The notes under the pieces are model-generated. The model searched no databases and was not told the origin of the DNA. It worked only from the letters and a program-made list of their open reading frames with translations. Positions 16,128 through 62,045 of a DNA stretch of 64,000 bases are shown here, piece by piece. The stretch covers positions 1-64,000 of IMG/VR virus record IMGVR_UViG_3300023184_000025; one strand, written 5' to 3'. How positions within the stretch are numbered: the first letter of the stretch is position 1; each line of letters opens with the position of its first letter. A program made the translations under genes and the position numbers.

Positions 16128-16964
16128 CTCTGTAATTTTGTCCACAAAGGCAGAGGCAGTTTTGATATCATAATGATATCCGTCCCGGGCAAGATCTAAT
16201 TTTTCAAATTCAGGAATAAATTGTACATCTGGCAATTGCTCTTGAAACATTGATTTAAAACCAGACGCACAGAAATTTGGAATAACGCTGTGAATTATGT
16301 TGCAGTTGCCTTTGTTTTCTTCTATCTTGTTAATACAATCAATAGTTAATGCTATGTCTGCTTCATCTGTGCTTTTGACAAAATGCAGTTTTAAATCCTC
16401 GTCACTGACGTTTGTCCAAGATTGATCAGAATTTTTTAATTCTTCTTGAATAAAGTTGGGTAGGATATCTATATCAATGACGTTGGGACATGCGGGCCAG
16501 GAAGAATCTTTTACATTGTTATAAAAGTCCTTCCACTTTTTATTTAAGACTGTTTGATATTCATTTTCTCTACGATGCAGATAACTCCAGTGTATGATCA
16601 CCATTTCAGGAACAATTTCTTCAATAACTGTTAATGCTTTTCTTGTAATCCATGAATTACTACCACCGTCCATGCTTACATTTACAATTCTTTGTTTCAA
16701 CTGAGACTGTAGTATATTTGGCCAAGTGTGAGATAACGGGCTTCCAATGCCCACAGTAAAGCTATCACCAATGCACCAAATTGATCTTTTTAAATCTACT
16801 GGCCATTCAGAATCTCTGAAGCCTCGACTGTTGTGTTTGTAATCTACAACAAATTTATATCTAGTAAAATGATTTTTATCTAGTGCCAATTTAATGTTGT
16901 CAATGCCACTGTATTCCCAACGTTGATTTATCCTACTAGGTAAAATAAAATCAGGTAAAATCAC
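16119..16964 (-). CDS. SGNH/GDSL-hydrolase-like protein
   Basis: NSRGFR, CIGDSFTVG, NVSMDGGSN and RDGYH motifs. Confidence 0.65.
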   Translation of the reverse strand: MILPDFILPSRINQRWEYSGIDNIKLALDKNHFTRYKFVVDYKHNSRGFRDSEWPVDLKRSIWCIGDSFTVGIGSPLSHTWPNILQSQLKQRIVNVSMDGGSNSWITRKALTVIEEIVPEMVIIHWSYLHRRENEYQTVLNKKWKDFYNNVKDSSWPACPNVIDIDILPNFIQEELKNSDQSWTNVSDEDLKLHFVKSTDEADIALTIDCINKIEENKGNCNIIHSVIPNFCASGFKSMFQEQLPDVQFIPEFEKLDLARDGYHYDIKTASAFVDKITELL

Positions 16965-17830
16965 TCAAGACCCATGCTCTTACGAATTTTAGTTGCGCTG
17001 ATATCAGTTATTGATGAGTCAAATGACTCTTGTTCAATCTTATAGCCAACATCTCTACCATAGGTAATGTTTACAATGTTAGGTACAACCTGTATTTCAT
17101 ACTGTCCTTGATACAAAGTATCTAAGTCACGCCGTATGAAAGATTTGACTTTTTCAATTTCAAATGGGTTAGAGCCTTGCCACCCTTGACAGTCACGTAT
17201 TTGAATTACCACTTGCCCTGTCTTGGCAATAGCACGTTCAAACAAAGCTCGATGGCCAGCATGCCAGGGCTGCCAACGACCTAACATTTGTACAGTTTCT
17301 TTTTGCCAATCAAACACTGGCCGACGGCGATTTTCTAATATATGCGATCCAATAAACTCAGCCCATTTTTCAGCATTTTGTTCTGTAATTCTAAAGTCAT
17401 ATACTTCAGGCGGAACAAAGGCCTTGTTGGTATCTTCGTAACGGCCTTTATCAATGGTGTCAACCCAGATGGTCCAATCAGCTTTGAAATTGTTGCGCAT
17501 CTCTACCAATGGTGCAACAAAGTCACAGATCACATATTCTCCTGAGCACTCTATGGCAAATTGGAACATACGCAAACTTTGACGAATACGTCCAGCATCA
17601 GAAAAATCCCAATCGTTATACTTTTTACGAATGTCGTCGGCATTGAACCAATCAACACCTACATTCATAAAGTTGGGACCGGGTATTCCTTCATAATTCA
17701 TTACTCGACTGGGATTAATTTTCATTAAATCCCCATTGGTTTCAATATATTGTTTTAGTGCCTGTGCTAGATATGTTTTGCCTGCACCGGGCAAGCCCAT
17801 TATTAAAATACGTTGTGTGCTCATTTCCAT
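16961..17830 (-). CDS. Adenylylsulfate (APS) kinase-like domain fused to an HxGH nucleotidyltransferase domain
   Basis: GLPGAGKT, NADDIR, DFS..GR and DFVAP (CysC-like); C-terminal GRWQPWHAGH and ISATKIR. Confidence 0.78.
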   Translation of the reverse strand: MEMSTQRILIMGLPGAGKTYLAQALKQYIETNGDLMKINPSRVMNYEGIPGPNFMNVGVDWFNADDIRKKYNDWDFSDAGRIRQSLRMFQFAIECSGEYVICDFVAPLVEMRNNFKADWTIWVDTIDKGRYEDTNKAFVPPEVYDFRITEQNAEKWAEFIGSHILENRRRPVFDWQKETVQMLGRWQPWHAGHRALFERAIAKTGQVVIQIRDCQGWQGSNPFEIEKVKSFIRRDLDTLYQGQYEIQVVPNIVNITYGRDVGYKIEQESFDSSITDISATKIRKSMGLE

Positions 17831-18447
17831 TTCCTTGAAGAGTGTTTTGCTAAATCATCTGTGGGATGATAATCCACAGGTTGAAAGTATTTACGATTGG
17901 TATCATCTTGTAAAATTTTATTTAATACTGGGTCTTTAAAATCTATTGGGAATTCCAATTGCTTTGAAATTTGCCGCAAATAATTTTCTTTATAAAGATG
18001 CAGTAACTCATAACTTAGGAATACAGGACTCCATGTTGTTAATTTTTCATATTCTGCCAGTGCTATATCAAATGTGGGTTCGCCGCGCACACGAGTTTCT
18101 TGACAGTTTAATACATTACGATCTCTACCAATGATAGCAATCTTTACCTGTATGCCCAGACCCATTGCAGTGGCAGCAAAACGCACAATATTGGGCACAG
18201 TACGCTCACCGTTCATCATGTACGGTGTACTTACACTGGTCACAAAGTACTTGCATTCACCCCAGACAAACTCTTTTAATAGATCGGGGTTCTCCCAACA
18301 GGCCGCAAAGGGTTCTTGATCATGCCCTATCCAGTATTCGTGTAACAAGGCATGCCATGCATACACATCAGGGTGTAAGGCAAAGATCTTGCTCCATAAA
18401 TGATTTCCCGAACCCTGCGGTCCTGTCAGGATTAACAGAGTTTTCAT
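17821..18447 (-). CDS. Sulfotransferase-like P-loop protein
   Basis: ILTGPQGSGNHLW, IIGRD and LSYELL motifs. Confidence 0.5.
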   Translation of the reverse strand: MKTLLILTGPQGSGNHLWSKIFALHPDVYAWHALLHEYWIGHDQEPFAACWENPDLLKEFVWGECKYFVTSVSTPYMMNGERTVPNIVRFAATAMGLGIQVKIAIIGRDRNVLNCQETRVRGEPTFDIALAEYEKLTTWSPVFLSYELLHLYKENYLRQISKQLEFPIDFKDPVLNKILQDDTNRKYFQPVDYHPTDDLAKHSSRKWK

Positions 18448-19109
18448 CTTGGCAAATGAGCTAGAAATTCTTGTGTGCGATCAGTTATAACGCCTGTTAA
18501 TTGTAGCGTTACTCGGGGATGGTGCCCAGCATTAGCAGTCGAGTGTGGCATGTTGACCCAGTCAAATGTGCTGACATCACCGGAACGCCATTGATTCCAG
18601 TGATGGTTACCATATTCCCAGAACTGTCCAGGTTGCCAGTCTGTGAGCTGAACAAATATACGCATCACACGTGAGGGATCTTCAGGATTCCATTTCTGTA
18701 ATTTATCCATGTGTAGGTTCCAAACTTCCCCAGGCTGTTGCACATGAATACGTTCCATGCAGTCGTCTAGCGCAAACTGGTTGGAAATCTTTTTGAGCGA
18801 CTCGGGCATGTTCCAGTTTAAATGAGTGATAATTATTTTGGGGTCTACACCCACACGCTCTAGATCATATTCTTCTGCCACCAGGTCCTCACGTGGAGGC
18901 AACACACCCTCGCCTTTGTAACCACGTGTTTCCCAGGTGGCCGGCTTGGAATTGGCCACTATGTCAGCAACATCAGCTGACCACGTGGGTTCAATGTGTC
19001 CTAGATGTGCAATTACATCTTCAAAACGATCCAATCTTTTACTATCAAAATGGTATGTGCTGGTGCTTTTGGTGAAATCCCAACTGCTTTTAAATTCGTC
19101 TGTTATCAT
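18444..19109 (-). CDS. 2OG-Fe(II) oxygenase / cupin-fold protein
   Basis: Q.PG...LHMD...PHSTANAG..PR.TLQ (HxD...H, R). Confidence 0.72.
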   Translation of the reverse strand: MITDEFKSSWDFTKSTSTYHFDSKRLDRFEDVIAHLGHIEPTWSADVADIVANSKPATWETRGYKGEGVLPPREDLVAEEYDLERVGVDPKIIITHLNWNMPESLKKISNQFALDDCMERIHVQQPGEVWNLHMDKLQKWNPEDPSRVMRIFVQLTDWQPGQFWEYGNHHWNQWRSGDVSTFDWVNMPHSTANAGHHPRVTLQLTGVITDRTQEFLAHLPR

Positions 19110-19735
19110 ATTACTTTTACCCTTATGTCGTTTACTGCGTACTCTTGTGTGTATTCTGCGGGAGGTGCATCTATGCCCAGGGCCGCAGCCAGTCGTAGAT
19201 TGTTGTCCATTACAGGTTTATCATTGTATTTCCACCATGCGGCCAATATGTCTCGATTCTGGCTGCAAATGATCTGTGCCATGTTCTTTAAGTCTCGAAA
19301 ATACTCATGATAGTCAGGATATGTTATATCAAAATGCCCGCATTTGACCCACCAGCCCAGGCATGCGTCATCATTTCGATGCACAATTACAATGGGTGTT
19401 TCGGGGAATAGGTCGCGCAAATAGTCAATGTGATTTGAGAACACATGACTTTTGATAATACGCACACCCTTGGATTCTTTAAATTGAAATGGCTCAGCAA
19501 ATATTTCTTCTAGTTGCTGTCTGTTTAATGTTGTCAAATCCTCAGGCAGTGGGCTAATCATGCCTGGATCAAAGTACGCACCCAGATGCATGAGTTCCAT
19601 TTTGCCCGATGCATCATGATAGTAAGTCCATTCATCTCTATAGTCCGAACGATCAATGTCAGGACTATAGTAGATGTTTTTGACTACACTACTCCATTTT
19701 GAGCCCGGAGCACCGGCTACAAAGATATATTTCAT
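19106..19735 (-). CDS. Sulfotransferase-like protein
   Basis: FVAGAPGSKWSSV, IIKSH and IVIVHR motifs. Confidence 0.5.
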   Translation of the reverse strand: MKYIFVAGAPGSKWSSVVKNIYYSPDIDRSDYRDEWTYYHDASGKMELMHLGAYFDPGMISPLPEDLTTLNRQQLEEIFAEPFQFKESKGVRIIKSHVFSNHIDYLRDLFPETPIVIVHRNDDACLGWWVKCGHFDITYPDYHEYFRDLKNMAQIICSQNRDILAAWWKYNDKPVMDNNLRLAAALGIDAPPAEYTQEYAVNDIRVKVI

Positions 19736-20715
19736 TCTTTACTTAAATCAATTCGACTCAACACAGGAATAAATGCCGCACGTAATTCGTCCATTTGCTT
19801 TCGAAGCCCTGCAGGAGTCAACTCATCTTCAGCATAGAAAATAACATTGGCTTCTCTGTATTCTGCATATTCTCGGCTACGAACCGCGGCACTAAATTGT
19901 TGTTGATACCAGGCAACAATTTCTCGATCTGTCCCAGGAGGCAATTGTATACTCCAGGCCGCATATACATTGATGCCAGGGGCAATGGTGTTCAACAACG
20001 GGACACCAGGAAACTGTGCCATCTTTTGTGTGCCTGTGAACCCAATAGGCTTTACCTTGCCTGCGTCAACCAGAGATTTGGCCACTGTAATCGGTATAAT
20101 AGCAAATTCAGTACCTGTTTTGCCGTCATAACTTGCGGCACTGGTTACTGCTGGCATAGGGCCGTTGAACCTTACAGGATTAACCATGTCTCTATTGCCT
20201 TTTCCTTTGTCCATCAAGTATTCATATGCTGTGCGATGTGCTCCACCGCCGACTGCAATATTAATTGTTCTGCCTGACTGAATATACTTCACAAACTCCT
20301 GTGGAGTATTAACACCGCTCTTGACACCGGCCACTAATACCAATGGTGATTTGCCCATGGTCAACACATCAATGAATGAGTCGTAATTGTATTTCTTTAT
20401 ATTCTTTTCCCAAATATCATTTGTTACATAACTGCTCATGTGGCTGGGCAAGTTAATAGTATGGCCGTCATTGACTGCTTCCAAAAACCGGTTGTTGGCA
20501 ATAACCGAATCGGCTCCGGGAATGTTTTGCACAACATAAACAAATTTAGGGTTTTGTTTCTGTACAATATCCGCCAGTTTACGAAAGGCCATTTCATTGC
20601 CAGCACCGGGTGTGTTACCAATATACACAGTGACAGGCTTAGTTGGTTCCCATGCGTGAACTAGTGTGCTTGCAGTAACAAGCAATAAAGCAACAAACTT
20701 TTTTAATGTACTCAT
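19732..20715 (-). CDS. Bug/TctC tripartite tricarboxylate transporter substrate-binding protein
   Basis: Signal peptide (AHA-like) then WEPTKPVT...PGAG, V.N.PGA, DGHT and P.VP...PG...W....PPGT. Confidence 0.85.
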   Translation of the reverse strand: MSTLKKFVALLLVTASTLVHAWEPTKPVTVYIGNTPGAGNEMAFRKLADIVQKQNPKFVYVVQNIPGADSVIANNRFLEAVNDGHTINLPSHMSSYVTNDIWEKNIKKYNYDSFIDVLTMGKSPLVLVAGVKSGVNTPQEFVKYIQSGRTINIAVGGGAHRTAYEYLMDKGKGNRDMVNPVRFNGPMPAVTSAASYDGKTGTEFAIIPITVAKSLVDAGKVKPIGFTGTQKMAQFPGVPLLNTIAPGINVYAAWSIQLPPGTDREIVAWYQQQFSAAVRSREYAEYREANVIFYAEDELTPAGLRKQMDELRAAFIPVLSRIDLSKE

Positions 20716-20746
20716 ATTATCTCCTTAAATATACTTAATTAAAAAA

Positions 20747-20777
20747 ACAAGACCAGTAAAATTTTTACAGGTCTTGT
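20747..20777. promoter_or_regulatory. Inverted repeat between the divergent tctC-like and methyltransferase genes
   Basis: ACAAGACC-AGTAAAATTTTTACA-GGTCTTGT. Confidence 0.45.
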
Positions 20778-20808
20778 AAAATTATTTATCTCAAAGGTAA
20801 AATTTTAT

Positions 20809-21534
20809 ATGAATACCAAAATTTTTGACTTATTAACTAAAAATTTGCAGGCCGCCTTTAATTTACCCAAGTATCAGAGAATTCTTGACACCATTGGGCC
20901 GGACACAGAAGTTGACAAACTTCCTTGGACTCCGGCTAGATATCGTAAATTCAAAGACGCTGTGGATGCTGAATTGCAGTTGTCCTGCGATTATGTTGGT
21001 ACATTAAAGAACATAACAGCTGATCTCAGCGAACGTTATATCAATCACTTTTTTGGCGAAATCTGGAAACCCAGAACTGGCGACTATGACTACACAGGCT
21101 GGCAGTTGGCTGAAGAAATTAATCAACTCAATCCACATAGTGTACTAGATGTTGGTTGTGGATATCATCCTTTTAAAGGTCGTATTAACAACGTTGTTGG
21201 TATTGATCCCTATAACAACTGCGCCGATTACATGGTTGACATTCTGGACTATGCTGGTAGTCACGATGTTATTATTGCTTTGGGATCAATTAACTTTAAT
21301 AGTCGTGATGAGATTGAATCACGCTTTGCTAAGTGTGTTGATCTATTAGAATCAGGCGGCAAATTTTATCTACGAGCAAACCCTGGAATCACACACAAAA
21401 CAGGACCATATGTTGACATATTCCCCTGGAGTTTTGAAATAGTCAAAGAGTTTGCTGACAAGTACAAGTTAAAGTTGTTAGAGTTTAAAAAAGACAACAA
21501 CGATAGACTGTACTTTGTGTATTCTAAACCTTGA
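20809..21534 (+). CDS. Class I SAM-dependent methyltransferase with N-terminal ACP-like domain
   Basis: VLDVGCG, VVGIDP and DVIIALGSINF motifs; the N-terminal ~75 aa resemble an acyl carrier protein pattern. Confidence 0.72.
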   Translation: MNTKIFDLLTKNLQAAFNLPKYQRILDTIGPDTEVDKLPWTPARYRKFKDAVDAELQLSCDYVGTLKNITADLSERYINHFFGEIWKPRTGDYDYTGWQLAEEINQLNPHSVLDVGCGYHPFKGRINNVVGIDPYNNCADYMVDILDYAGSHDVIIALGSINFNSRDEIESRFAKCVDLLESGGKFYLRANPGITHKTGPYVDIFPWSFEIVKEFADKYKLKLLEFKKDNNDRLYFVYSKP

Positions 21535-22165
21535 TATCTTTGATTAAATCAAAGGCAGCCAAATGAGCTTGTTCTAAAGGGTGTAGTGTGTTGCTAATAG
21601 GATATCCTTTGACCTGGCTCCACTCTAAGAAATTCTTATCTTCAAACTTGGTCATGTAAGGACGTACATAGTTTTGTAGGTCCATAATTCCTGGCGGTGC
21701 ATGATATTTACTGTCAAAGGTTAAGTCGTCCATGTAGGTCATTATAAATGGACAGTTCTTTTCTTTAAGTGTGTCTATGGCCAAGCGCATACACATTAGA
21801 GTATTGAGTTTATCTCTGTACTCAGAGTGTAGGTTTTTAAAATAAAAAGTAGAATTGGTATCTTTTTCAATAGGGCGTAGTGTTAGCCAATCATCTTTGT
21901 GATCAGTGTGATCAAATCGATCAATCCAGGTCCATCCGATCACAAACAAGCTGTGTTCATTGCAGCCTGCTTGATTTAGCACACGGTCAAGTATGCTGAG
22001 ATTGCCAATGCCTGGGCGGGCATAACAAATATATTGGTAATCTAAATGATTAGCAAGATGTGCGGGCCAGGTTAGTTTACTGGGTGTGGCCCAAAGAGCA
22101 CCATTTCCGTCGTCAGATAAATCTGTTCCAAAAATGAAACTGCACCCAAAGCTTTTGAGTTTCAT
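21524..22165 (-). CDS. SGNH-hydrolase-like protein
   Basis: FGCSFIFG, TWPAHLA, PGIGN and HPLEQAH motifs. Confidence 0.65.
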   Translation of the reverse strand: MKLKSFGCSFIFGTDLSDDGNGALWATPSKLTWPAHLANHLDYQYICYARPGIGNLSILDRVLNQAGCNEHSLFVIGWTWIDRFDHTDHKDDWLTLRPIEKDTNSTFYFKNLHSEYRDKLNTLMCMRLAIDTLKEKNCPFIMTYMDDLTFDSKYHAPPGIMDLQNYVRPYMTKFEDKNFLEWSQVKGYPISNTLHPLEQAHLAAFDLIKDIKV

Positions 22166-22173
22166 AGGTATAG

Positions 22174-22728
22174 TTATATACCAGCGGCGGCCTGTAGACT
22201 GCGAATATCTTTTTCGCGTTCAAAAATTTGTTTTGGTTGAATACCTGCGGCTATGCGCATTTCGTTTAGTCCTGACTCTTTTTCTTTACGATACAGTTTA
22301 GGACTTAGCGGAACTAAGCTATCAAATATTTCTTCAGTAAAAGGGTGCTCTTTTCCTTCGTAGCGCATGGTCCAGTCGTCAGGGCCAAACTCGGTGAGTG
22401 TACTTAAATCGTCAACTAACTCTGCTGTGTGCTTGCCAGAAGTACTACGTCTACGCATTTCTACGTAGACCAGATATCTACCGGCTTTGATTTCTCCTGG
22501 ACTGGTGTCTGAATCCAACACAAAGTCATAGCCTTTTTCAAACCAATTCACAAGATCCTTTGCGGCTTGTTTACTGCGAACAAAAAAGCTTAGTACAATA
22601 ATTTCGTCGTCGTCGCCCATTTTACTAGCAAATTCGTCCACGTGAATTGTGGGCTTCATCATGCCCTCTAGGTCCTTGTACTCAAGGCCTTCAAACAGCG
22701 GCTGGTTGTTGTGCATCTTGTCCTCCAA
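22174..22728 (-). CDS. Hypothetical phage late protein
   Basis: Acidic ORF coupled to the upstream gene; LFE|G near the N-terminus. Confidence 0.6.
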   Translation of the reverse strand: MEDKMHNNQPLFEGLEYKDLEGMMKPTIHVDEFASKMGDDDEIIVLSFFVRSKQAAKDLVNWFEKGYDFVLDSDTSPGEIKAGRYLVYVEMRRRSTSGKHTAELVDDLSTLTEFGPDDWTMRYEGKEHPFTEEIFDSLVPLSPKLYRKEKESGLNEMRIAAGIQPKQIFEREKDIRSLQAAAGI

Positions 22729-23281
22729 TTGCTGGTTGTTGTACGTCGTCTTGCCGGAATTCTTCTTGGTCTAGATCTTCTTCGTAGGCGCTGTCTAGAT
22801 CTTCTAGGTCAATTTGTTCGCCTTCCATCTCAATGGAGCCTGTGCGAATATCAGACATCAATGTCTTGGGCATGACTATTTCAACCAGCCATACTTTTTT
22901 ATCGATTAATCGTGCTTTGTGTGTACCAGGAATGAAATCATCGGGATCCTCAATTTTAATTGGAATCTTTATGTTTTTCTTCATGTATTTTACTTCGCAG
23001 TCAAAGGGAAGTAAACGACGAGCCCCACGTGGGTCGGGCATGAGTTTTTCAGGCCACATAAAAATACAGCCAACTTTGTATTTTCCGATAGTTGGACCTT
23101 GTACTAGTTCACCCAAAATCCAATTTTTAAATGCATAGATATCTAGCTCATCCAGCACACGTTCAAAGTCCAACAGGCTCAACAGACTACCTTCAGACAT
23201 GTAGATGTTTTTAATATTGTCGGCTACCAGCCAGTAATCACTGTGGTCTTTGAAGATATCTTTATCAAGTTTATTGCTCAT
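22691..23281 (-). CDS. Hypothetical phage late protein
   Basis: 196 aa with an MPDPRG motif and acidic tail; TAAATA 5 nt before the ATG. Confidence 0.65.
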   Translation of the reverse strand: MSNKLDKDIFKDHSDYWLVADNIKNIYMSEGSLLSLLDFERVLDELDIYAFKNWILGELVQGPTIGKYKVGCIFMWPEKLMPDPRGARRLLPFDCEVKYMKKNIKIPIKIEDPDDFIPGTHKARLIDKKVWLVEIVMPKTLMSDIRTGSIEMEGEQIDLEDLDSAYEEDLDQEEFRQDDVQQPAIGGQDAQQPAAV

Positions 23282-23436
23282 ACTATTATTTATTGTTCTT
23301 TAGAAACTAGTTGGTTTTTGCTTTATTGTCAGGATCCGGACAGCCTAATACTTATGACATAATTTACCGAAATACAGATACACTAAACTTATTTTTATAA
23401 TGCCTAAATACCTGTGCCCAGGAAAGGGAGTTAACT

Positions 23437-24189
23437 ATGTTCAAAGGAGAACCGAACTTGAGTAGAAACCGAGGCGCCAAGGCGCAAAAACGCATCCAAA
23501 CAGTTACTGAAAATACCATTCAATTTAACTTACAACCCAACTTAAAACAACGAGCAATAGAACTTATACCCAAAACTAAAAACCAAGAAAACCTTATATT
23601 AAATCTACTCGACGTAGATCAGCACATCATAGTAACAGCAGGGCCAGCAGGAACTGGTAAAACTTATCTAGCCATGCTGGCAGCGGTCAAAGCATTTAGA
23701 AGTGGAGAAGCCAAGCGTATCGTTCTAACTCGTCCCGCCATTGGCGTGGAGGATGAACAACATGGCTTTTTACCCGGCAATCTAGTGGCCAAAATGGAAC
23801 CCTGGACAAGACCCCTGCTTGATGTACTGCGTGAATACTACCGACCCACTGAGATCACTGCAATGATTGAAGATGGTACTATTGAAATTTCACCCTTAGC
23901 CTACATGCGTGGACGCACGTTCAAGCATTCCTGGATTATTGCAGATGAAATGCAAAACGCTACTCCTGCACAGATGAAAATGCTATTAAGCCGTATAGGC
24001 ACAGGCAGTCGTATTGTGGTCACCGGAGATGTGGAACAAGCAGATCGACAACAGGATAACAATGGGTTGTTGGATCTATGCTTAAAATTAGAAGCAAGAC
24101 CCATCAACGGAATGGCTGTGTGCAGAATGACCGGCCGAGATATACAAAGACACCCAATAATTGGAGAGGTACTACAATTATATCAATAA
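23437..24189 (+). CDS. phoH: PhoH-family ATPase
   Basis: GPAGTGKT, LTRPA, GFLPG, YMRGRTF, DEMQN and VTGD..Q.D motifs; alternative TTG start at 23458. Confidence 0.93.
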   Translation: MFKGEPNLSRNRGAKAQKRIQTVTENTIQFNLQPNLKQRAIELIPKTKNQENLILNLLDVDQHIIVTAGPAGTGKTYLAMLAAVKAFRSGEAKRIVLTRPAIGVEDEQHGFLPGNLVAKMEPWTRPLLDVLREYYRPTEITAMIEDGTIEISPLAYMRGRTFKHSWIIADEMQNATPAQMKMLLSRIGTGSRIVVTGDVEQADRQQDNNGLLDLCLKLEARPINGMAVCRMTGRDIQRHPIIGEVLQLYQ

Positions 24190-24225
24190 ACATTTAACAA
24201 CAAAGGGCAGACTATAAATATTTGA

Positions 24226-25212
24226 ATGATTAAAATAGACCAAATCCGTGCATTACACATTGAACTTAGTTCTCGTTGCAATGCACGATGTCCCATGTGT
24301 ATGCGTAACTACCGGGGCGTGGATTTTAATGGAGGGTATCCGTTGACTGAGTTGTCACTCAGTGATATTCAACACATATTCCCTTCACACTTTTTAAAAC
24401 AAATTAACCGTATTAACTTTAACGGAAATCTTGGAGATTTTAGTCTGGCCAGCGATGCGTTGGAAATAGTTGACTACTTTTTATCTAATAGTACTGCTCA
24501 AATACAGATTGAAACAAATGGTAGTACACGTTCTACTGCCTGGTGGCAGAAATTAAACAACCATCGAATTAAAGTATTATTTGCATTAGACGGACTCAAA
24601 GACACACACAATCTGTACCGTCAGAACACTGATTGGGAAAAAATAATAGATAATGCTGTGGCGTTAATCCAATCAGGCGGAAATGCTGTTTGGAAATTTA
24701 TTCCGTTTAAACATAACCAACATCAATTTAATAGTTGTCAGACACTGAGCCGTCAGTTGGGATTTTCAGATTTTACAGTACGAGATCAGGGACGTAATCA
24801 AGGACCGGTATTTACAAGAAACGGCGAGTTTAGTCATTGGCTTGGCGATGCACAATCTGACATACCCGATTCTAATGCTTTAATTGAAGATCATTTGACC
24901 TGGTTTGATTATAAAAAGAAAATTCCCTGGGTTAATGATAATGCACAAATAGATTGTGGCCATATAAAACAAAAAGAGATTTATATAGCTGCCGACGGAT
25001 CTGTGTATCCTTGTTGTTATCTGGGATATTTTCCAAAGACAATGCATCAACCAGGAAACAGTCAATTTAAAGATCTTGTCAAAGAAAACAATGCATTAGA
25101 ATACAGTCTAGAGCATTGCATTGATTGGTTTGACCAGGTAGAAAAAACCTGGACTTTACCCAGTGTGGCACAGGGTAAGTTGTATACGTGTGTTAGTGCC
25201 TGCGGACACTAA
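24226..25212 (+). CDS. Radical SAM protein with SPASM/twitch-like C-terminus
   Basis: CNARCPMC, ETNG, FALDG and ADGSVYPCC...C..ACG motifs. Confidence 0.88.
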   Translation: MIKIDQIRALHIELSSRCNARCPMCMRNYRGVDFNGGYPLTELSLSDIQHIFPSHFLKQINRINFNGNLGDFSLASDALEIVDYFLSNSTAQIQIETNGSTRSTAWWQKLNNHRIKVLFALDGLKDTHNLYRQNTDWEKIIDNAVALIQSGGNAVWKFIPFKHNQHQFNSCQTLSRQLGFSDFTVRDQGRNQGPVFTRNGEFSHWLGDAQSDIPDSNALIEDHLTWFDYKKKIPWVNDNAQIDCGHIKQKEIYIAADGSVYPCCYLGYFPKTMHQPGNSQFKDLVKENNALEYSLEHCIDWFDQVEKTWTLPSVAQGKLYTCVSACGH

Positions 25213-25219
25213 CACTTTT

Positions 25220-25843
25220 CTATTCACCAATGATAATATTGTAGAGTTCTTTCCAATTTTTTACTATTGGAATTGATTCATGGTAATGGTTCATGTTATG
25301 CCCGTGTTCAATGAGAATTGATTTGAGTCCAATATCAAACCCAACTTTGGCATTTTCGGGTTTGTCTTCTACCCACCAGCACCCTGAGTTTCTATAAGGC
25401 TCAAGTGCTTCGTGTTTGTCAGCACCTGTAGGCAAACAAACAATCTCTTCAAATACTGTATCGCCAAACAATTTGTCAAGATTCATTCTGCGTAATTTTT
25501 GTGCGTTGGGATCTGTACTAAGGCTAGTAATACAATGAAACACATAGCCATGTTCTTCATGAAGACGTTTTACATAGTACATGGCATCACGCAGGGGTGG
25601 CAAGAATCCAATTGCGGCGCTTTCATTGAACATCTTGATCAGTTTGCGACCTTGTTCGTAAGAGATATTGTAACGTTCCCCAATATCGTAGTTTAACTCG
25701 CCGCCGGGTACCTTTGTAAATCCATGTTCGTCCATCCAGATAGCAAAGGCGTACTCCCAATTAAGCAGTACTCCGTCACAGTCAACTAGGATTACCTGAC
25801 TGTTCACCTGGCTGAGAGATCGGTTCTTGTTTAGTAATTTCAT
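25220..25843 (-). CDS. HAD-superfamily phosphatase (5'-nucleotidase-like)
   Basis: LVDCDGVL, ITS, K and WVEDK motifs. Confidence 0.82.
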   Translation of the reverse strand: MKLLNKNRSLSQVNSQVILVDCDGVLLNWEYAFAIWMDEHGFTKVPGGELNYDIGERYNISYEQGRKLIKMFNESAAIGFLPPLRDAMYYVKRLHEEHGYVFHCITSLSTDPNAQKLRRMNLDKLFGDTVFEEIVCLPTGADKHEALEPYRNSGCWWVEDKPENAKVGFDIGLKSILIEHGHNMNHYHESIPIVKNWKELYNIIIGE

Positions 25844-26843
25844 ATCCGTTTTCTTTAAATAATCGTGTAATGGTCAATATAATATTAAGTCAATGTAAAC
25901 GAGCAGTGATTGTATTGTATAGATAATCAGCCCAAATCTCATGACCAAGTTCAGTTGGATGTTTTGTGGCTTTTTGGTAATTTAACTTGCTTTTTTCTAA
26001 CCATGAGATTGCCAATTCACTGCTGGCATATAGACTCATAAATTGGAATTTATATTTTTTATACAGGTCAATATCTTTGAGTAGCTTGTGCAATGGTACC
26101 AGCGCAATGCCAGAAAGAAATCTAACATCTGTAGGATAATCTTGATTACTCTGATACTCAGCCAAACAATCGACCCAGATTTTTTTAGTTAGATAATCTT
26201 CAAGCACTGAAATATTACTATCAAAACTGTAGGTAAAGTTTCTAGAAATTACAAATTGAACCAAACTATGTTGCTTGCATGTTTGAGCAAGATTCTCAAA
26301 CATATTTTTTTCGTATTCACACAAATATTCTTCAAGACTGGGTTGTTCTTCAGGAACCCAAACTCTGTCCCAATATGATTCTCGGCAGTTTTCAGTTAGA
26401 GTAATTGTCACAATAATCTTTTTATATTTTGTCTCAACTATAGGTAAAAGACTTTTTACCCAATCACAAAACTCTATATTGGCACCACCACACTTGGCAA
26501 GATTGATAAAATCAGCATCTAGTTTTTTTGCCAGCAATGCACCATATATTTTGTTGACTCTGTTGGGATGGTCATGCTTACCAGCTTCAGCATCAATATC
26601 AAGAAGACTATCTCCCCAGGTCCAGCTGTCCCCAGCTGTGATCAACAAAGTATCTTTGTTGTGTAGTGATTCATGATACCACGATCTTGCTGGAGATGAA
26701 AGATTGTTGTGTATTTCAGCTAATAAATTAAAATAACCCATTGATCTAAGTTGTTAGGGCAACAGCGTTGCCGATTGTTTGTTCATTGGCTTTTCTTCTT
26801 TTTTAATTTCGTACCCGTTTTCTTTAAGTAATCGTGTAATGGT
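25835..26843. repeat. 40-bp imperfect direct repeat (25835-25874 / 26804-26843) bracketing an SGNH gene
   Basis: taatttcatatccgttttctttaaataatcgtgtaatggt vs taatttcgtacccgttttctttaagtaatcgtgtaatggt (37/40 identical). Confidence 0.85.
25890..26741 (-). CDS. SGNH-hydrolase-like protein
   Basis: AGDSWTWG, NLAKCGGAN and HPTELGH motifs. Confidence 0.68.
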   Translation of the reverse strand: MGYFNLLAEIHNNLSSPARSWYHESLHNKDTLLITAGDSWTWGDSLLDIDAEAGKHDHPNRVNKIYGALLAKKLDADFINLAKCGGANIEFCDWVKSLLPIVETKYKKIIVTITLTENCRESYWDRVWVPEEQPSLEEYLCEYEKNMFENLAQTCKQHSLVQFVISRNFTYSFDSNISVLEDYLTKKIWVDCLAEYQSNQDYPTDVRFLSGIALVPLHKLLKDIDLYKKYKFQFMSLYASSELAISWLEKSKLNYQKATKHPTELGHEIWADYLYNTITARLH

Positions 26844-27059
26844 TGACTCGTAGTACTGATAAAAATAAGTGATAATTTTGTCCCAGTCCTTGGGTAAATT
26901 TTGACCTTCCAGGGTGCATTTTACCACCTCAAGTTTTTTAAAGTCTAAGATAACACTACAGGTCTGGATGTCTTTGGTTTTGACATTTTTAGATACAGTC
27001 ATGACTTCGTCAATTTTGCCATCAGCTTTTCTAAAGTATGTAATAAGCATGTATCTCAT
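26754..27059 (-). CDS. Hypothetical protein
   Basis: 101 aa, coupled to the clamp loader gene. Confidence 0.6.
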   Translation of the reverse strand: MRYMLITYFRKADGKIDEVMTVSKNVKTKDIQTCSVILDFKKLEVVKCTLEGQNLPKDWDKIITYFYQYYESTITRLLKENGYEIKKEEKPMNKQSATLLP

Positions 27060-27976
27060 AGCTGACTTAACTCTACTAGTGTCGCTGACAAATTAATTTC
27101 TTGGTCTGCCATCATTGGAATGTTTACAATTCCTTGTCTAATGATAACAATGGCCTGATCTTGCTTTGCAGGATTATCACTCCATAAATCAAGATTATCA
27201 TACATCCAACGATACACTTCTTCCATTTCTTCTGGACGCACACTTGAACATAGCAAAATACGTGCTTCTTTAACTCGACCAGCTTTGAATAAATTGACTA
27301 CATCCAATTTCCAGTCTTTGATTGCACCGCCTTCGTCGCCCCTAGGAGAAGTAAGTTGTCCACTAGTGGAATTCATCTGACACATGTTAAGACATTTACG
27401 CAGATCAGGATACGTTGCTTTTACATAAGTATCCAAGGTATCCAAGTCAAACTCCATGCCTTCTGTGACCAACACAGTGGCAACACGAGCAGTAAACTCA
27501 GTGACGTCCACACGTTCAATGTGAAAACCCTGGCACCTAGAATGTAGCGCAGGAATAATACGGTTAGGGTAGTTACAAGTAAGAATGAAACGAGCACTGG
27601 CATGATATGTTTCCATGACACCGCGCAATGCAGCCTGCCCATTTGGAGTGATATAGTCTGCTTCGTCTAACAGTACAACTTTAAATTCACCAAACGGCAT
27701 TGTTTGCACAAAGCCAGTGATCTTATCTCTGATTGTTTCTACAGAGTTTTCTCTCGATGCGTTAATTTCTAACACATCATATTCGTCAATGCCCAATTGA
27801 TGTATCAGGATTTTGGCCAAGGTAGTTTTGCCCACACCCGGAGCTCCACTAAACAACAAGTGAGGTATTGAAGCCGACTTGACCCATCCTGCTACCTGTT
27901 CCTTTTGTGCATTGTCTCTAAATACATAACCATCCAAATCTATAGGGCGGTATTTTTCTGTCCAAAGTTCTTTCAT
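27056..27976 (-). CDS. Clamp loader ATPase subunit (RFC small subunit / T4 gp44-like)
   Basis: WTEKYRP, PHLLFSGAPGVGKTT, EINAS, LDEAD, AALR and SRC motifs. Confidence 0.92.
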   Translation of the reverse strand: MKELWTEKYRPIDLDGYVFRDNAQKEQVAGWVKSASIPHLLFSGAPGVGKTTLAKILIHQLGIDEYDVLEINASRENSVETIRDKITGFVQTMPFGEFKVVLLDEADYITPNGQAALRGVMETYHASARFILTCNYPNRIIPALHSRCQGFHIERVDVTEFTARVATVLVTEGMEFDLDTLDTYVKATYPDLRKCLNMCQMNSTSGQLTSPRGDEGGAIKDWKLDVVNLFKAGRVKEARILLCSSVRPEEMEEVYRWMYDNLDLWSDNPAKQDQAIVIIRQGIVNIPMMADQEINLSATLVELSQL

Positions 27977-27977
27977 G

Positions 27978-28160
27978 TTACCAACTCTCCACGTCTGTTA
28001 TATCTAATTTAATTGTTGACTTAGGATCAAACTCAATGCTAACATTGGGTCCAATGCCGCTGGTAGATTCTTCAGACCACGTTACTGTATCAATATCATA
28101 CATTTCAAAAACTTCTTTGAGTTTTTGAAATTGCGTTTTAGTAATTACGATTGTTTTCAT
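27978..28160 (-). CDS. Small hypothetical protein
   Basis: 60 aa with an SGIG motif, ending DITDVESW; in operon. Confidence 0.6.
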   Translation of the reverse strand: MKTIVITKTQFQKLKEVFEMYDIDTVTWSEESTSGIGPNVSIEFDPKSTIKLDITDVESW

Positions 28161-28383
28161 TTCTTTTTAATACCTCAATCATTCTGTCTTGTTCCCACCG
28201 ATCTTCATCAGTGAATTTGGGCAAGTCTGCATACAAATCTTCTATAAAACATTTTACACGATATAAGTCTTGTTTGCAACAGGAAGAGGTAAAACCGTCA
28301 TTGTACGGAGAACGAACTTGGCTGGCAATAGAACGCAGTTGCTGAAAGATATCAGCAATGTCCCAGTTTTGTTTAAAACCCAT
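28138..28383 (-). CDS. Hypothetical protein
   Basis: SPYNDGFT motif; in operon. Confidence 0.6.
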   Translation of the reverse strand: MGFKQNWDIADIFQQLRSIASQVRSPYNDGFTSSCCKQDLYRVKCFIEDLYADLPKFTDEDRWEQDRMIEVLKRNENNRNY

Positions 28384-28757
28384 TAACGGCGTGAGGATGC
28401 TTGAATAGCGTCTGACAGAGTGTCATCGGACGGCTGTGTTTTAGATATCAATAAAATGTCTTTTGGGTCAACTTTTCGGATTGTTTTTGCTCCAACGTCA
28501 TCTTCAATTTCAACACCACGTGTCCAACGACCATGTGCCACGCAAATCCATTGTCCAACAGTGACATCTTTTTGTTCTGGACCAACGGCATAAACTTCAC
28601 CCCAGCGTGGTCTTATTCCGGCTGTGGTACCATTGTCGTTTAGTAGTAAAATACCGCTTTGTAGTTTGCGGCCTGAAAACTCCATTTCGGCAACAATCAC
28701 TGTGTCACCTAGTGGTCTTAGTTTGGAAATTCTATGCGGTGCAAAAGCTAATTTCAT
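28383..28757 (-). CDS. GroES-like co-chaperonin (phage gp31-type role likely)
   Basis: LRPLGDTVIV, SGILL and GEVYAVGP...V.VG motifs. Confidence 0.85.
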   Translation of the reverse strand: MKLAFAPHRISKLRPLGDTVIVAEMEFSGRKLQSGILLLNDNGTTAGIRPRWGEVYAVGPEQKDVTVGQWICVAHGRWTRGVEIEDDVGAKTIRKVDPKDILLISKTQPSDDTLSDAIQASSRR

Positions 28758-28758
28758 C

Positions 28759-29184
28759 TTAAATTTTCCTGTTTTCTTCCTGTGCCATCTGACGTGCTGT
28801 TTTTAATGGTTCTTGTTTGACCTGTCTTGCTCTGGCAATGGCCGCGGCTAAACCAACAACTTCCTGAGCCTCGGGCACATCAATTGGTTTAACAAAATCA
28901 TCGTTGAAGTCTTCCGGTGCATCAGGTATGTCAACCACAGGAGTTGATGCTTCTGCTGATTTGGCACTAGAATAAATCTTTGTATCTTGTACATTTGTTT
29001 GACGTCCATATTGTTTGTTTACTCGATTGTTTCGAGAATCAATAGGACGATTCATACTGTCAATTAAATCACCACGAGCATTTACGCCCATATTACCTAC
29101 AGCACGTACTTCTTCGTTCTGAAGTTGTAGTGCCCCAAGGTCAACGGTTTTTCCGTTGGCAGTTTTATAAATTTTGCGTGTCAT
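28759..29184 (-). CDS. Hypothetical phage protein
   Basis: 141 aa with AVGNMGVNARGD motif. Confidence 0.65.
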   Translation of the reverse strand: MTRKIYKTANGKTVDLGALQLQNEEVRAVGNMGVNARGDLIDSMNRPIDSRNNRVNKQYGRQTNVQDTKIYSSAKSAEASTPVVDIPDAPEDFNDDFVKPIDVPEAQEVVGLAAAIARARQVKQEPLKTARQMAQEENRKI

Positions 29185-29207
29185 TGTCTATCCTCTTAAA
29201 ATTTTAT

Positions 29208-30330: not shown

Positions 30331-30566
30331 GATATATCTATTTTATCTGAAAAATCAGGACCTGATTTTTTATTTGCATCATACATTTTTTGTGTTTTTT
30401 CTCGATATTTGTTGGTGTATGTTTCTATGGCCATTCTTATTTGACCAGACAAAAATGCATTTCCTGTACGATGTGCAAAACTTAATTTTTTGTTCAAGTC
30501 GGATATCTTAGATTGTAATTCTTCTAAGCTCAGTCCGTCAATGTTGTTTATTAGTGGATGTTCCAT
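30327..30566 (-). CDS. Hypothetical coiled-coil protein
   Basis: Likely start MEHPLI at 30566, downstream of the promoter/hairpin. Confidence 0.6.
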   Translation of the reverse strand: MEHPLINNIDGLSLEELQSKISDLNKKLSFAHRTGNAFLSGQIRMAIETYTNKYREKTQKMYDANKKSGPDFSDKIDIS

Positions 30567-30570
30567 GAAT

Positions 30571-30617
30571 AAAAAAGCCCTTGATGCTATTATAGCAATA
30601 AGGGCCTGTGAGGTCAA
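30571..30617 (-). terminator. Rho-independent terminator of the structural operon, overlapping a sigma70 promoter
   Basis: GCCCTT..TGCTA-N3-TAGCA..AAGGGC followed by T6 on the minus strand; TTGACC (30617-30612)-N17-TATAAT (30594-30589). Confidence 0.7.
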
Positions 30618-30626
30618 GTGTTTTGG

Positions 30627-60813: not shown

Positions 60814-60991
60814 TTTATTTCTTTCCACTTTAACATTGCTACCAGTTCCTTTTTTGTGTCTTTAAATTCAATAGCCCAGGAATCGTTGTACCAAGCCCAA
60901 CAATAATCTTGACCTGTTTCAAACCCAATACTAGATAACCAATTGGAAATTTCTAGTAGTCTCCAGGAATCAAATACCATCATTTGTCTGA

Positions 60992-61315
60992 TTAACCAGT
61001 AGACTTAAATCGCTGAATAACAGCGTCATCACCGTCGGTGATCTTGATTTGTAATTGCTTACTCGACAGTTTGTCCTGAATCTCTTTAACTGACCGTCCT
61101 TGTACTACAAATTCATTGGTAGCGGTGTTCCAAACGTAAAACATTCCGCCAACTTCTTCTATTCGTGCTCCGATAATTAATTCTGATATACGAAGAGTTT
61201 CTTGACTGTTTGCATCAATTAGCATGTCTGCAAGTCTCCCTAGCACAATATATGCTAGCCATATACAAACAATAATTCCAACCAACAATCCTAATAAAAA
61301 ATCAGCTAATTCCAT
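60992..61315 (-). CDS. Membrane-anchored hypothetical protein
   Basis: Likely start MELADFLLG after AAGGA. Confidence 0.55.
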   Translation of the reverse strand: MELADFLLGLLVGIIVCIWLAYIVLGRLADMLIDANSQETLRISELIIGARIEEVGGMFYVWNTATNEFVVQGRSVKEIQDKLSSKQLQIKITDGDDAVIQRFKSTG

Positions 61316-61316
61316 T

Positions 61317-62045
61317 TTATTCCTTGCGCTTTCTACAATTCCAATACAACTCATGAATCTCTGCGGCAGACTCGTAGTGTTTTTTAAATTCAAAGTACTC
61401 AACACATTTTGTATATAGCCCTTTATTTAAATCAATATTGTGTAAGGACTCTGCGTCGACAACACAATATTCTTCAGGTACAGGACGAACATGTTTTATT
61501 AAATTATGAACTTCTACTGCTTCTGCAATTACTGTTGTGGGTGCTGTTTCATAAAATTCTTTAGCAGAATCATACCAGGTCCAGTTTTCTTCTTTGATTC
61601 CTTGATAGAATTCTCTCCAGTCGTTGCCTTGAACGCTGGACTTAAAGGCATTGAAATCATCTATGTATTGTTGTACCGGTCTACCACCCAGTGTTGGATG
61701 AACATTTAAGTAATGTGCTAAACAACTTTTTTCATCGTCAAAATTCAATATCAATAGTTTATCATAATCGTAGGCTGGCCAATCATGTGTGTGTAATATC
61801 TGCATAAAAGAATCTAATTTTTCTCTATGTAAAAATTCACTTTTCAACCAATTTTTTTGACTACGGTTTGAGCTATAAACTTCTCTGCGAATAAATTCAA
61901 GTTTGGCATCAACAGTATTATCAATGTCAATATCAAAAATATCAGCATAGTTACATTTGTCATCAAGAGACAGCAACCATCTCAAATGATTGCCACAGCC
62001 GCCCCTGGGGAAAATTATACCTCTACGCAAGTTTTTATTTGGCAC
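61317..62045 (-). CDS. Hypothetical protein, weakly sulfotransferase-like
   Basis: IIFPRGGCGNHLRWLL...HTH. Confidence 0.45.
   Translation of the reverse strand: MPNKNLRRGIIFPRGGCGNHLRWLLSLDDKCNYADIFDIDIDNTVDAKLEFIRREVYSSNRSQKNWLKSEFLHREKLDSFMQILHTHDWPAYDYDKLLILNFDDEKSCLAHYLNVHPTLGGRPVQQYIDDFNAFKSSVQGNDWREFYQGIKEENWTWYDSAKEFYETAPTTVIAEAVEVHNLIKHVRPVPEEYCVVDAESLHNIDLNKGLYTKCVEYFEFKKHYESAAEIHELYWNCRKRKE

What the first reader, a model, noticed from the sequence alone, without database searches (positions are those of the whole stretch)
16437..61619. Shared ~33-aa module inserted in two unrelated enzymes
The SGNH-like protein contains WKDFYNNVKDSSWPACPNVIDIDILPNFIQEEL (16437-16535). The distant 61317..62045 protein contains WREFYQGIKEENWTWYDSAKEFYETAPTTVIAEA (about 61519-61619). 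Both follow W..FY..[VI]K...W......[DF]....P..[IV]..E. A common insert in different scaffolds suggests a mobile docking or substrate-recognition tag that links dispersed tailoring enzymes into one pathway (inference).
Basis: partly seen in the sequence, partly recalled or inferred. Interest (0 to 1): 0.6.

Follow-up and report, generated by a model that had tools for sequence, protein, structure and literature searches.

The report
Phage-only mini-domain shared by many enzymes
A roughly 40-residue helical module that no searched database describes is spliced into at least 25 unrelated protein families of uncultured freshwater phages, including the two proteins flagged here, so these phages appear to reuse one small building block across many enzymes, for a purpose still unknown.

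Summary
Both segments sit at the stated coordinates.

**Significance.** A profile built only from homologues of the SGNH protein (A) was run against all ORFs of the phage. It picks out a third protein, C (pentein/amidinotransferase-like, outside the window), at E=5e-12 and protein B at E=5e-4. The next hit is 0.64.

**The module is a separate unit.** Each scaffold has relatives that lack exactly this segment:
- SGNH orthologues in related phages;
- the wider B family of about 200 representatives;
- C's tandem paralogue.

**Distribution.**
- It occurs 1-5 times in 16 of 23 related large-phage records.
- 145 distinct module-bearing ORFs fall into 25 scaffold clusters.
- Scaffolds with Pfam support above the curated cut-off are two radical SAM types, Methyltransf_24/CmcI and FkbM methyltransferases, amidohydrolase and Asp/Asn beta-hydroxylase. 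SGNH, pentein and sulfotransferase-like rest on fold or motif evidence.
- The module sits at the N-terminus, internally or at the C-terminus.
- A strict DNA pattern finds at least 119 places in viral contigs. It finds 2 tiny MAG contigs in 596 Gb of prokaryote genomes.
- A protein search with one module finds nothing in 50,697 GenBank phages.
- No Pfam family covers the module.

**Function.** This is inferred, not shown. The most likely role is a shared recognition or targeting element on tailoring enzymes. The ACP partner idea has no support.

The parts
16119..16964 (-). Protein A, 281 aa. SGNH/GDSL-fold hydrolase-like enzyme and member of a family with 1597 word-search hits at E<=0.01; the 120 listed are about 277-358 aa and nearly all cover 96-100% of A.
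   Evidence: ORF. Weak Pfam GDSL hits below cut-off. 1597 hits. AF2 pLDDT 91.9. Foldseek TesA E=2.3e-6. GDS at 66-68 and D261/H264 invariant in the family.
16419..16553 (-). Module copy in A (aa 138-182). Helix 136-151 (W144..F147,Y148..V151), loop K-D-S-S-W-P-A-C-P (152-160), short helix 162-167, helix 170-177 (L168-P169..I172..E175).
   Evidence: Y148, W156, P157, L168 and E175 are invariant, and W144, D153, P169 and I172 are >=90% conserved, in 29 homologues at about 48% identity. Secondary structure and pLDDT 91-95. It starts 3 residues after the invariant R131-R132-E133 that follows strand 121-126. SGNH orthologues L040, L047, L057 and L052 lack exactly this stretch.
61317..62045 (-). Protein B, 242 aa. 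Uncharacterised family with a conserved N-terminal GG.GNH.RWLL motif and a P-loop sulfotransferase/NMP-kinase-like fold.
   Evidence: ORF. No Pfam or PDB sequence match. 197 representatives at E<=1e-3 among 1.84 billion proteins. AF2 pLDDT 83. Foldseek StaL E=0.046. VIA-align Z 8.1-8.4 to sulfotransferases over about 155-160 residues.
61500..61637 (-). Module copy in B (aa 137-182), divergent type: W-R-E-F-Y-Q-G-I-K-E-E-N-W-T-W-Y...A-P-T-T-V-I-A-E-A-V-E-V-H.
   Evidence: Independent A-family profile E=5e-4. hhalign E=4.3e-5. Present only in B and its 4 close homologues. The other 23 aligned family members (195-255 aa) have a gap of about 45 residues here. Modelled with low confidence, pLDDT 44-64.

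Best explanation
SHOWN.
- The two segments are copies of one small protein module of about 38-45 residues. An approximate consensus is W-x2-[FY]-Y-x2-[IV]-[KR]-D-x-S-W-P-x-C-x6-8-L-P-x2-I-x2-E-[CIL]-x3-H. It is acidic, with median net charge -3.
- In protein A it is predicted as helix / W-P loop / short helix / helix.
- It is a discrete evolutionary unit. It has been placed in frame at N-terminal, internal or C-terminal positions in at least 25 scaffold clusters that are unrelated at BLAST level. Most scaffolds that could be assigned a family are enzymes.
- Each of the three scaffolds in this phage has relatives without it.
- In the searched collections it is essentially confined to uncultured viruses. 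This phage comes from lake and freshwater metagenomes.

INFERRED.
- The module is an autonomously folding mini-domain. Its conserved aromatic and aliphatic residues (W, F/Y, Y, I/V, W-P, L-P, I) would form its own small core.
- It gives otherwise unrelated tailoring enzymes one common property. The most likely property is affinity for one shared thing: a common moiety of the acceptor they all modify, or a common protein or carrier on which they act.
- In A it starts directly after the loop that follows strand 3, where SGNH enzymes carry block III (established knowledge of SGNH hydrolases such as TesA). It would therefore wall the substrate pocket like a lid. In terminal fusions it would act as a tethered recognition or targeting element.
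- The scaffold types, the sulfation genes beside A, and the sugar-nucleotide enzymes near module genes elsewhere suggest glycan or other surface-polymer tailoring as the shared pathway.
For: Homology and significance.

Third and fourth copies.

Conservation as strong as the catalytic blocks across a family with 1597 hits.

Separable unit:
- B subclade insertion.
- C against its tandem paralogue.
- SGNH orthologues without it.

Many scaffolds and positions:
- 46 hits in 16 of 23 related records.
- 145 unique ORFs in 25 clusters.
- 96 internal, 19 N-terminal, 19 C-terminal.

Scaffold identities:
- Asp_Arg_Hydrox 2e-11, Amidohydro_2 2e-14, Methyltransf_24 1e-17, FkbM 1.5e-6.
- Radical SAM 8e-9 in one cluster, which is above the curated cut-off. 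A second cluster, with the module at the N-terminus, reaches only 3e-6, just below it.
- SGNH fold.
- Sulfotransferase-like fold.

Confident helical model of the module in A.

Virus restriction:
- At least 119 pattern hits in IMG/VR against 2 contigs of <=2.5 kb in 596 Gb of prokaryote genomes.
- None in GenBank phages.

Not covered by Pfam or PHROGs.

Clustering of module genes: adjacent pairs less than 1.5 kb apart in G003, G007, G011, G012 and G013 and in L145 and L212.

Pathway context:
- APS-kinase/cytidylyltransferase-like and sulfotransferase genes next to A.
- Cytidylyltransferase plus mannose-6-P-isomerase, methyltransferases and radical SAM genes among frequent neighbours.
- A module-less C homologue sits beside KdsA/KdsB, a glycosyltransferase and 2OG oxygenases in Synechococcus phage S-SCSM2R.
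Against: - No ligand, partner or activity has been tested, and no candidate partner was identified.
- Most conserved positions lie on one face of each helix (i, i+3, i+4, i+7). That pattern is what a purely structural core would give. Few conserved polar residues (D, S, C, E, H) are left for a common binding site, and C and H are not universal.
- The three genes in this phage are dispersed: 45 kb and 21 kb apart.
- No model coordinates were available, so closeness of the module to any active site rests on sequence topology only.
- B's module is modelled with low confidence, and B's membership is the weakest link (hhalign probability 69%).
- The 145-ORF census was seeded partly with a DNA pattern that fixes several motif residues. 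Residue frequencies are therefore inflated at those positions.
Confidence: 0.5

Rival explanations
1. The module is a structural cassette only. It is a stable helical mini-domain recruited repeatedly as a lid, spacer or solubility element. It has no ligand or partner common to the different enzymes, and each scaffold uses it in its own way.
For: Conserved residues are mostly hydrophobic or aromatic and follow helical periodicity, as expected for a self-contained core. Surface positions vary. In A it is packed with high confidence on the SGNH core. Natural orthologues do without it.
Against: This reading does not explain why one cassette spread to at least 25 scaffolds, mostly enzymes, within uncultured phages while being almost absent elsewhere. 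It also does not explain why module genes are often adjacent, or why D, S, E and the W-P loop are nearly invariant across scaffolds.
Confidence: 0.22
2. The module is a sorting or targeting signal. It directs the enzymes to one place during infection, for example into the virion, to an assembly intermediate, or to a phage-made compartment or host structure.
For: It is independent of position (N-terminal, internal, C-terminal). It is restricted to large phages. It occurs 1-5 times per genome on diverse enzymes. It is acidic and well conserved.
Against: No virion proteomics, compartment genes or receptor were identified here. Known capsid-targeting sequences such as that of T4 are short, N-terminal and cleaved (own knowledge), unlike this module, which is internal in 96 of 134 complete ORFs and folded in A.
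Confidence: 0.13
3. The module is a selfish in-frame DNA element, like Rickettsia palindromic elements. On this reading it inserts into coding genes and is tolerated rather than used.
For: It gives the same kind of picture: a 35-50 aa peptide inside many unrelated proteins, with clean presence/absence between orthologues.
Against: - There is no nucleotide similarity between copies beyond what the shared residues impose.
- There is no common or consistently stable secondary structure; z-scores are -2.6, +1.0 and -1.9 with different folds.
- Residue-level conservation is strong at about 48% family identity across a family with 1597 hits.
- The predicted fold in A is confident.
Confidence: 0.04
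4. The resemblance is chance or compositional, between two unrelated loops.
For: The A-B pairwise BLASTP is only E=0.010 over 19 residues. phmmer B against C gives E=0.05.
Against: The independent profile gives C 5e-12 and B 5e-4, with noise starting at 0.64. hhalign gives 4.3e-5 for the module only. Dozens of further copies score E as low as 1e-21.
Confidence: 0.02

Closest known systems
Dockerin modules of cellulosomal enzymes (with cohesin scaffoldins)
   Same: A small module is attached to many catalytically unrelated enzymes of one functional theme, so that they share one property. This is the nearest functional analogue if the docking reading is right.
   Different: Dockerins are about 70 aa with duplicated Ca-binding loop-helix motifs. 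They are terminal and have a known cohesin partner. This module is about 40 aa with no repeat, is mostly internal, has no known partner and gave no Pfam dockerin hit.
RiPP recognition elements (PqqD-like RRE) on tailoring enzymes
   Same: One recognition domain is fused to radical SAM enzymes, methyltransferases, hydroxylases and others, so that all act on one precursor. The scaffold list here is similar.
   Different: An RRE is an 80-90 aa winged helix with a beta-sheet (own knowledge). This module is half that size and all-helical in the model. There was no PqqD hit in the Pfam scans, and no precursor peptide was identified.
Rickettsia palindromic elements inserted in frame in protein-coding genes
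   Same: A peptide of similar length is found inside many unrelated proteins, with presence/absence between orthologues.
   Different: RPEs are recognisable at DNA level and palindromic (own knowledge). Here the similarity exists only at protein level and no shared RNA/DNA fold is seen.
Lid or cap insertions of SGNH hydrolases and sulfotransferases
   Same: In A the module follows the strand-3 loop, where SGNH enzymes carry substrate-shaping loops. In B it lies in the variable region between core elements.
   Different: Known lids are family-specific. They are not one homologous cassette shared across different folds.

Membership tests
SGNH/GDSL hydrolases (protein A scaffold) | Block I G-D-S with the nucleophile Ser | tested here: met
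   G66-D67-S68 are invariant in 29 homologues.
SGNH/GDSL hydrolases (protein A scaffold) | Block V D-x-x-H | tested here: met
   D261 and H264 are invariant.
SGNH/GDSL hydrolases (protein A scaffold) | Block III G-x-N-D with the oxyanion Asn after strand 3 | tested here: not met
   The family has H-W-S-Y-x3-R-R-E after strand 121-126 instead. N103 in D-G-x-S-N might substitute, but this was not tested.
SGNH/GDSL hydrolases (protein A scaffold) | Fold match and Pfam score above cut-off | tested here: inconclusive
   Foldseek matches TesA at E=2.3e-6, probability 1.00, with 81 PDB matches at E<=1e-3. Pfam gives 18.6 and 18.0 bits, below the cut-offs of 23.6 and 32.9.
PAPS-dependent sulfotransferases (protein B scaffold) | Sulfotransferase fold with 5'-PSB and 3'-PB motifs | tested here: inconclusive
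   VIA-align gives Z 8.1-8.4 over 154-161 residues to SULT1B1, Sult2a8 and StaL, but guanylate kinase ties at 8.4. Foldseek gives E=0.046. There is no Pfam hit. The N-terminal P-R-G-G-C-G-N-H-L-R-W sits where the PSB loop would be, but it is not the canonical motif.
Pentein / amidinotransferase superfamily (protein C scaffold) | C-terminal catalytic Cys in a G-G-x-H-C motif; family-level sequence match | tested here: inconclusive
   F-W-D-G-G-I-H-C-V-T is present at the C-terminus. Pfam ADI gives E=0.076, below cut-off. A tblastn homologue in Synechococcus phage S-SCSM2R is annotated glycine amidinotransferase. No structure was predicted.
Dockerin | Duplicated Ca-binding loop-helix of about 22 residues; Pfam PF00404 | tested here: not met
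   There is no internal repeat in the module. No dockerin hit appeared in the Pfam scans of 37 module-bearing ORFs.
RiPP recognition element (PqqD-like) | Winged helix of about 85 aa with a three-stranded sheet | tested here: not met
   The module is about 40 aa and helical only in the model of A. No PqqD family hit was found.
In-frame palindromic selfish elements (RPE-like) | DNA-level similarity between copies and a palindromic structure | tested here: not met
   blastn-short finds only words of 7-13 nt; core identity is 22-28 of 39 nt. Fold z-scores are -2.6, +1.0 and -1.9 with different structures.

The most novel reading that the evidence does not exclude
The module is a phage-specific docking code. 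It would be a dockerin-like tag, tolerated even inside enzyme cores. Through it, a changing set of tailoring enzymes (hydrolase, sulfotransferase-like, amidinotransferase-like, methyltransferases, radical SAM, hydroxylase, amidohydrolase) would be recruited to one phage-encoded hub, carrier or virion surface. The result would be a modular multi-enzyme tailoring machine that large freshwater phages re-equip by domain shuffling.
Probability: 0.15. Interest if true: 0.85.

Novelty: new variant of a known kind. Interest (0 to 1): 0.66.

Why it matters
If the module is a shared recognition or docking element, it marks which of the many 'hypothetical' enzymes of large uncultured phages act together. 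That would give an entry point to a phage-encoded tailoring pathway that cannot yet be studied in culture.

It would also be a rare natural case of one small domain that works at termini and inside at least three different enzyme folds. That is of interest for protein engineering.

Even on the purely structural reading it defines a new virus-restricted domain family. A profile of it would annotate hundreds of proteins that currently have no match.

Tried and rejected
- **GenBank phages.** megablast of both neighbourhoods, and tblastn of A and B, found no match. tblastn of a typical module found no match at E<=1.
- **Word search on the module.** Restricted to C's module, it found only one close homologue, which reflects the limited reach of word searches.
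- **ESM Atlas.** A feature search with the module gave only a weak lead, score 0.76, which is below the useful range.
- **The search for related loci in genome contigs.** A fixed-gap IUPAC pattern was used instead, which sees only the x8 spacing variant.
- **ACP partner.** There is no PP-binding domain in the record, and a motif scan found no convincing small carrier protein.
- **Selfish-DNA reading.** Rejected.
- **Complex prediction.** Not run. No candidate partner emerged, and the report makes no binding claim.
- **Literature.** Motif strings gave no paper, and topic searches found nothing relevant.
- **Metal site.** A site formed by C22, C39 and H43 was considered and dropped, because these residues are not shared by all types. 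C lacks C22, and the A family lacks C39.
Full report
**1. Observation**

- Protein A is window 16119-16964 (281 aa). Its segment WKDFYNNVKDSSWPACPNVIDIDILPNFIQEEL spans 16437-16535.
- Protein B is window 61317-62045 (242 aa). Its segment WREFYQGIKEENWTWYDS... starts at 61619.
- In the six-frame translation of the window, W[KR][DE]FY and W..FY.{7}W occur only at these two places.
- The pairwise BLASTP is marginal: E=0.010 over 19 residues, with nothing else aligned.

**2. Genome context**

- The window is part of a 262,308-bp IMG/VR virus record, G000 (40% G+C, estimated 76% complete).
- IMGVR_UViG_3300023184_000025 (345,154 bp, 99% complete; handle G001) carries the same genes at 100% identity. 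Its numbering coincides with the window's.
- Contigs of lake-water and freshwater metagenome runs hold half or more of the sampled words of the stretch in four studies. Two of those studies include the possible source samples. Smaller shares occur in runs of other studies.
- No GenBank phage matches either neighbourhood or A and B.

**3. A third and a fourth copy**

A search of the phage's own genome with A found a 53-residue match inside a 379-aa protein outside the window. This is protein C, at G000 219977-221113 (minus strand), P0003. Its segment reads WEEFYNVVKDPSWPEKSVDITDLPSHVQQECLEVHNW.

C bridges A and B. It shares KD.SWP and LP..[IV]Q.E with A, and E..EVHN with B.

phmmer against all ORFs of the genome gave these results:

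| Comparison | E-value | Note |
|---|---|---|
| A to C | 3e-6 to 5e-6 | module only |
| B to C | 0.05-0.06 | best non-self hit in both directions |

The complete record G001 holds a fourth copy, in a 435-aa paralogue of C at G001 204636-204737.

**4. Independent significance test**

- A has 1597 word-search hits at E<=0.01. The 120 listed nearly all cover 96-100% of A at 45-52% identity.
- In an alignment of 29 of them, the module is as conserved as the catalytic blocks. Y148, W156, P157, L168 and E175 are invariant. W144, D153, P169 and I172 are at least 90% conserved.
- A profile was built from these module columns alone, so it contains neither B nor C. Against all ORFs of at least 40 aa in the genome it scored as follows:

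| Protein | E-value |
|---|---|
| C | 5e-12 |
| B | 5e-4 |
| next ORF | 0.64 |

- Profile-profile comparison of the A family with B and its four close homologues aligns only the module. It gives E=4.3e-5 and probability 69%.
- B's homologues have W-P where the window copy has W-T.
- The similarity is therefore real for A and C and probable for B. B is the most diverged type.

**5. The scaffolds are unrelated**

- **A.** It models with pLDDT 91.9 and matches SGNH hydrolases (TesA E=2.3e-6). G-D-S and D..H are invariant. Pfam scores lie below the cut-off, and block III is atypical.
- **B.** It has no Pfam or PDB sequence match. Its family has 197 representatives among 1.84 billion proteins. It models with pLDDT 83 and resembles sulfotransferases and P-loop nucleoside/nucleotide kinases. 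Z is 8.1-8.4, which is middling, so only the fold class is suggested.
- **C.** It ends in the G-G-I-H-C motif of the pentein superfamily. It has a weak ADI hit (E=0.076) and a homologue annotated glycine amidinotransferase in Synechococcus phage S-SCSM2R.
- Nothing outside the module aligns between the three.

**6. The module is a separable unit**

- **B family.** Of 27 aligned members, only B and three of its four close homologues carry the segment (the fourth, P0006, carries it). The other 23 (195-255 aa) have a gap of about 45 residues, with well-aligned flanks.
- **C.** The tandem paralogue directly downstream (G000 218843-219898, 352 aa, E=7e-157) aligns over residues 1-109 and 154-378 and has only a short unrelated stretch in between. 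A second paralogue (353 aa) also lacks the module.
- **A family.** SGNH orthologues of related phages (L040, L047, L057, L052; 36-39% identity) lack exactly the stretch between the conserved W-S-Y-x3-R-R-E and the D-E..R-R motif. Paralogues of A in the same genome lack it too.

**7. Distribution**

A 45-position profile of the module (alignment A3) was searched in 23 large IMG/VR records that carry an A-family gene.
- It gave 46 hits in 16 records, 1-5 per record. Seven of the 8 records that are at least 90% complete had a hit.
- G009 (352 kb, 100% complete) has a module-less SGNH orthologue and no module hit at all.

A strict DNA pattern for K/R-D-x-S/T-W-P-x-C-x8-L-P-x2-[IVM]-x2-E gave these counts:
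- Only 2 in 596 Gb of prokaryote species genomes. Both are contigs of <=2.5 kb in lake MAG bins, and both are true modules. They are probably viral fragments binned by mistake (inference).

tblastn of a typical module against 50,697 GenBank phage records found nothing at E<=1. GenBank relatives of C lack the module.

All loci together give 181 module-bearing ORFs. Of these, 145 are distinct, and they fall into 25 clusters when the module is masked. Among the complete ORFs, the module is internal in 96, N-terminal in 19 and C-terminal in 19.

Pfam assigns the scaffolds as follows:

| Scaffold | Pfam support |
|---|---|
| Methyltransf_24/CmcI | 1e-17 |
| Amidohydro_2 | 2e-14 |
| Asp/Asn beta-hydroxylase | 2e-11 |
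| Radical SAM, two clusters | 8e-9 (above cut-off); 3e-6 (just below cut-off) |
| FkbM methyltransferase | 1.5e-6 |
| MTS-like methyltransferase | weak |
| GDSL | weak |
| DUF6492 | weak |
| remaining clusters | no hit |

No Pfam family covers the module itself in the 37 module-bearing ORFs scanned, and PHROGs gave nothing there for A and B. No paper contains the motif strings.

**8. Shape**

- In the confident model of A the module consists of helix 136-151, loop 152-161 (K-D-S-S-W-P-A-C-P-N), helix 162-167 and helix 170-177.
- The conserved W144, F147, Y148 and V151, and L168, I172 and L176, follow i/i+3/i+4/i+7 spacing. I read this as one buried face per helix, that is, a small core of its own (inference).
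- The module is acidic, with median net charge -3. This argues against nucleic-acid binding.
- Residue frequencies are inflated at the positions fixed by the search pattern.

**9. Not a DNA-level mobile element**

- The three copies share no nucleotide similarity beyond what the shared residues impose.
- Their RNAs have no common or consistently stable fold.
- 'Mobile' therefore means domain shuffling over evolutionary time.

**10. Function (inferred)**

Three findings argue that the module adds one common, selectable property:
- one cassette occurs on many enzymes;
- it is restricted to viruses in the searched collections;
- module genes are often adjacent. Pairs lie less than 1.5 kb apart in G003, G007, G011, G012 and G013, and two sit in one locus in L145 and L212.

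In A it begins three residues after the invariant R-R-E that follows strand 3. That is the place of the block III and substrate-responsive loops in SGNH hydrolases (established knowledge of TesA-type enzymes). It should therefore line the pocket.

The context points to tailoring of a glycan or other surface polymer:
- GH19, an APS-kinase/cytidylyltransferase-like protein, sulfotransferase(-like) genes and a TctC-type receptor lie next to A.
- Sugar-nucleotide enzymes, methyltransferases and radical SAM genes are frequent neighbours elsewhere.
- KdsA/KdsB, a glycosyltransferase and 2OG oxygenases lie beside the module-less C homologue of S-SCSM2R.

I therefore favour a shared recognition or targeting element, for a common acceptor moiety or a common protein or carrier. 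The main rival is a purely structural cassette, followed by a localisation signal. None of these was tested.

No ACP-type partner exists in the record. Complex prediction was not used, because no candidate partner emerged and no binding is claimed.

**11. Verdict**

- The finding is real and larger than reported. It is a new, apparently virus-restricted mini-domain family.
- It behaves like known promiscuous accessory modules (dockerin, RRE) but differs in size, in fold class and in being mostly internal.
- It is not a member of any family tested.

Noticed in passing
window 14301-20715: There is a sulfation-type gene cluster around protein A:
- a GH19-like protein (14301-14936);
- a P-loop APS-kinase-like domain fused to a cytidylyltransferase-like domain (16961-17830);
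- a sulfotransferase, PF13469 (19106-19735);
- a further P-loop protein with G-P-Q-G-S-G-N-H (17821-18447) that resembles B's N-terminal motif;
- a TctC-type solute receptor (19732-20715).
   Followed up: partly
G000 218843-221113 (window-equivalent 80897-83167, outside the window): Two tandem pentein/amidinotransferase-like paralogues sit side by side (352 and 379 aa, E=7e-157). They differ mainly by the module. The shorter one keeps a W and a Q-D-C at aligned positions. This may be a remnant of a deleted module rather than a site that never had one.
   Followed up: partly
window 61577-61579 (codon 156 of protein B): The window's copy of B has Thr where its four close homologues, and 99% of all modules, have the hallmark Pro of W-P. 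It could be a relaxed or drifting copy.
   Followed up: no
L131 (CAISKC010000217.1, 2472 bp) and L132 (CAITDW010000242.1, 1658 bp): These are the only prokaryote-genome hits of the module pattern. They are tiny contigs binned into lake MAGs labelled Legionella sp. and Candidatus Saccharibacteria. Both encode true modules, E=1e-15 and 5e-17. They are probably mis-binned viral fragments.
   Followed up: partly
G003 7256-8138; G007 39031-40605; G011 158160-158817; G012 273048-273732; G013 139172-139829: In related phages, two module-bearing genes of different scaffolds lie side by side. An example is an SGNH-like gene of about 300 aa next to an unknown protein of about 420-440 aa.
   Followed up: partly
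window 7311-9602 and 24226-25212: The window encodes a 763-aa ATP-dependent protease (phrog_4871, E=1e-238) and a radical SAM protein (phrog_21308). Neither carries the module.
   Followed up: no
G000 20553-34838 (outside the window): There is an open frame of 4762 aa on the plus strand of the phage record (listing). It was not examined.
   Followed up: no
IMG/VR pattern loci L133-L251: Twenty-eight or 29 of the 119 module loci carry a RecA/UvsX-like gene and a 330-aa protein nearby. That protein looks like a T4 gp32-type ssDNA-binding protein by eye. Neither has a BLAST match in G000. The module may therefore occur in more than one phage lineage.
   Followed up: partly
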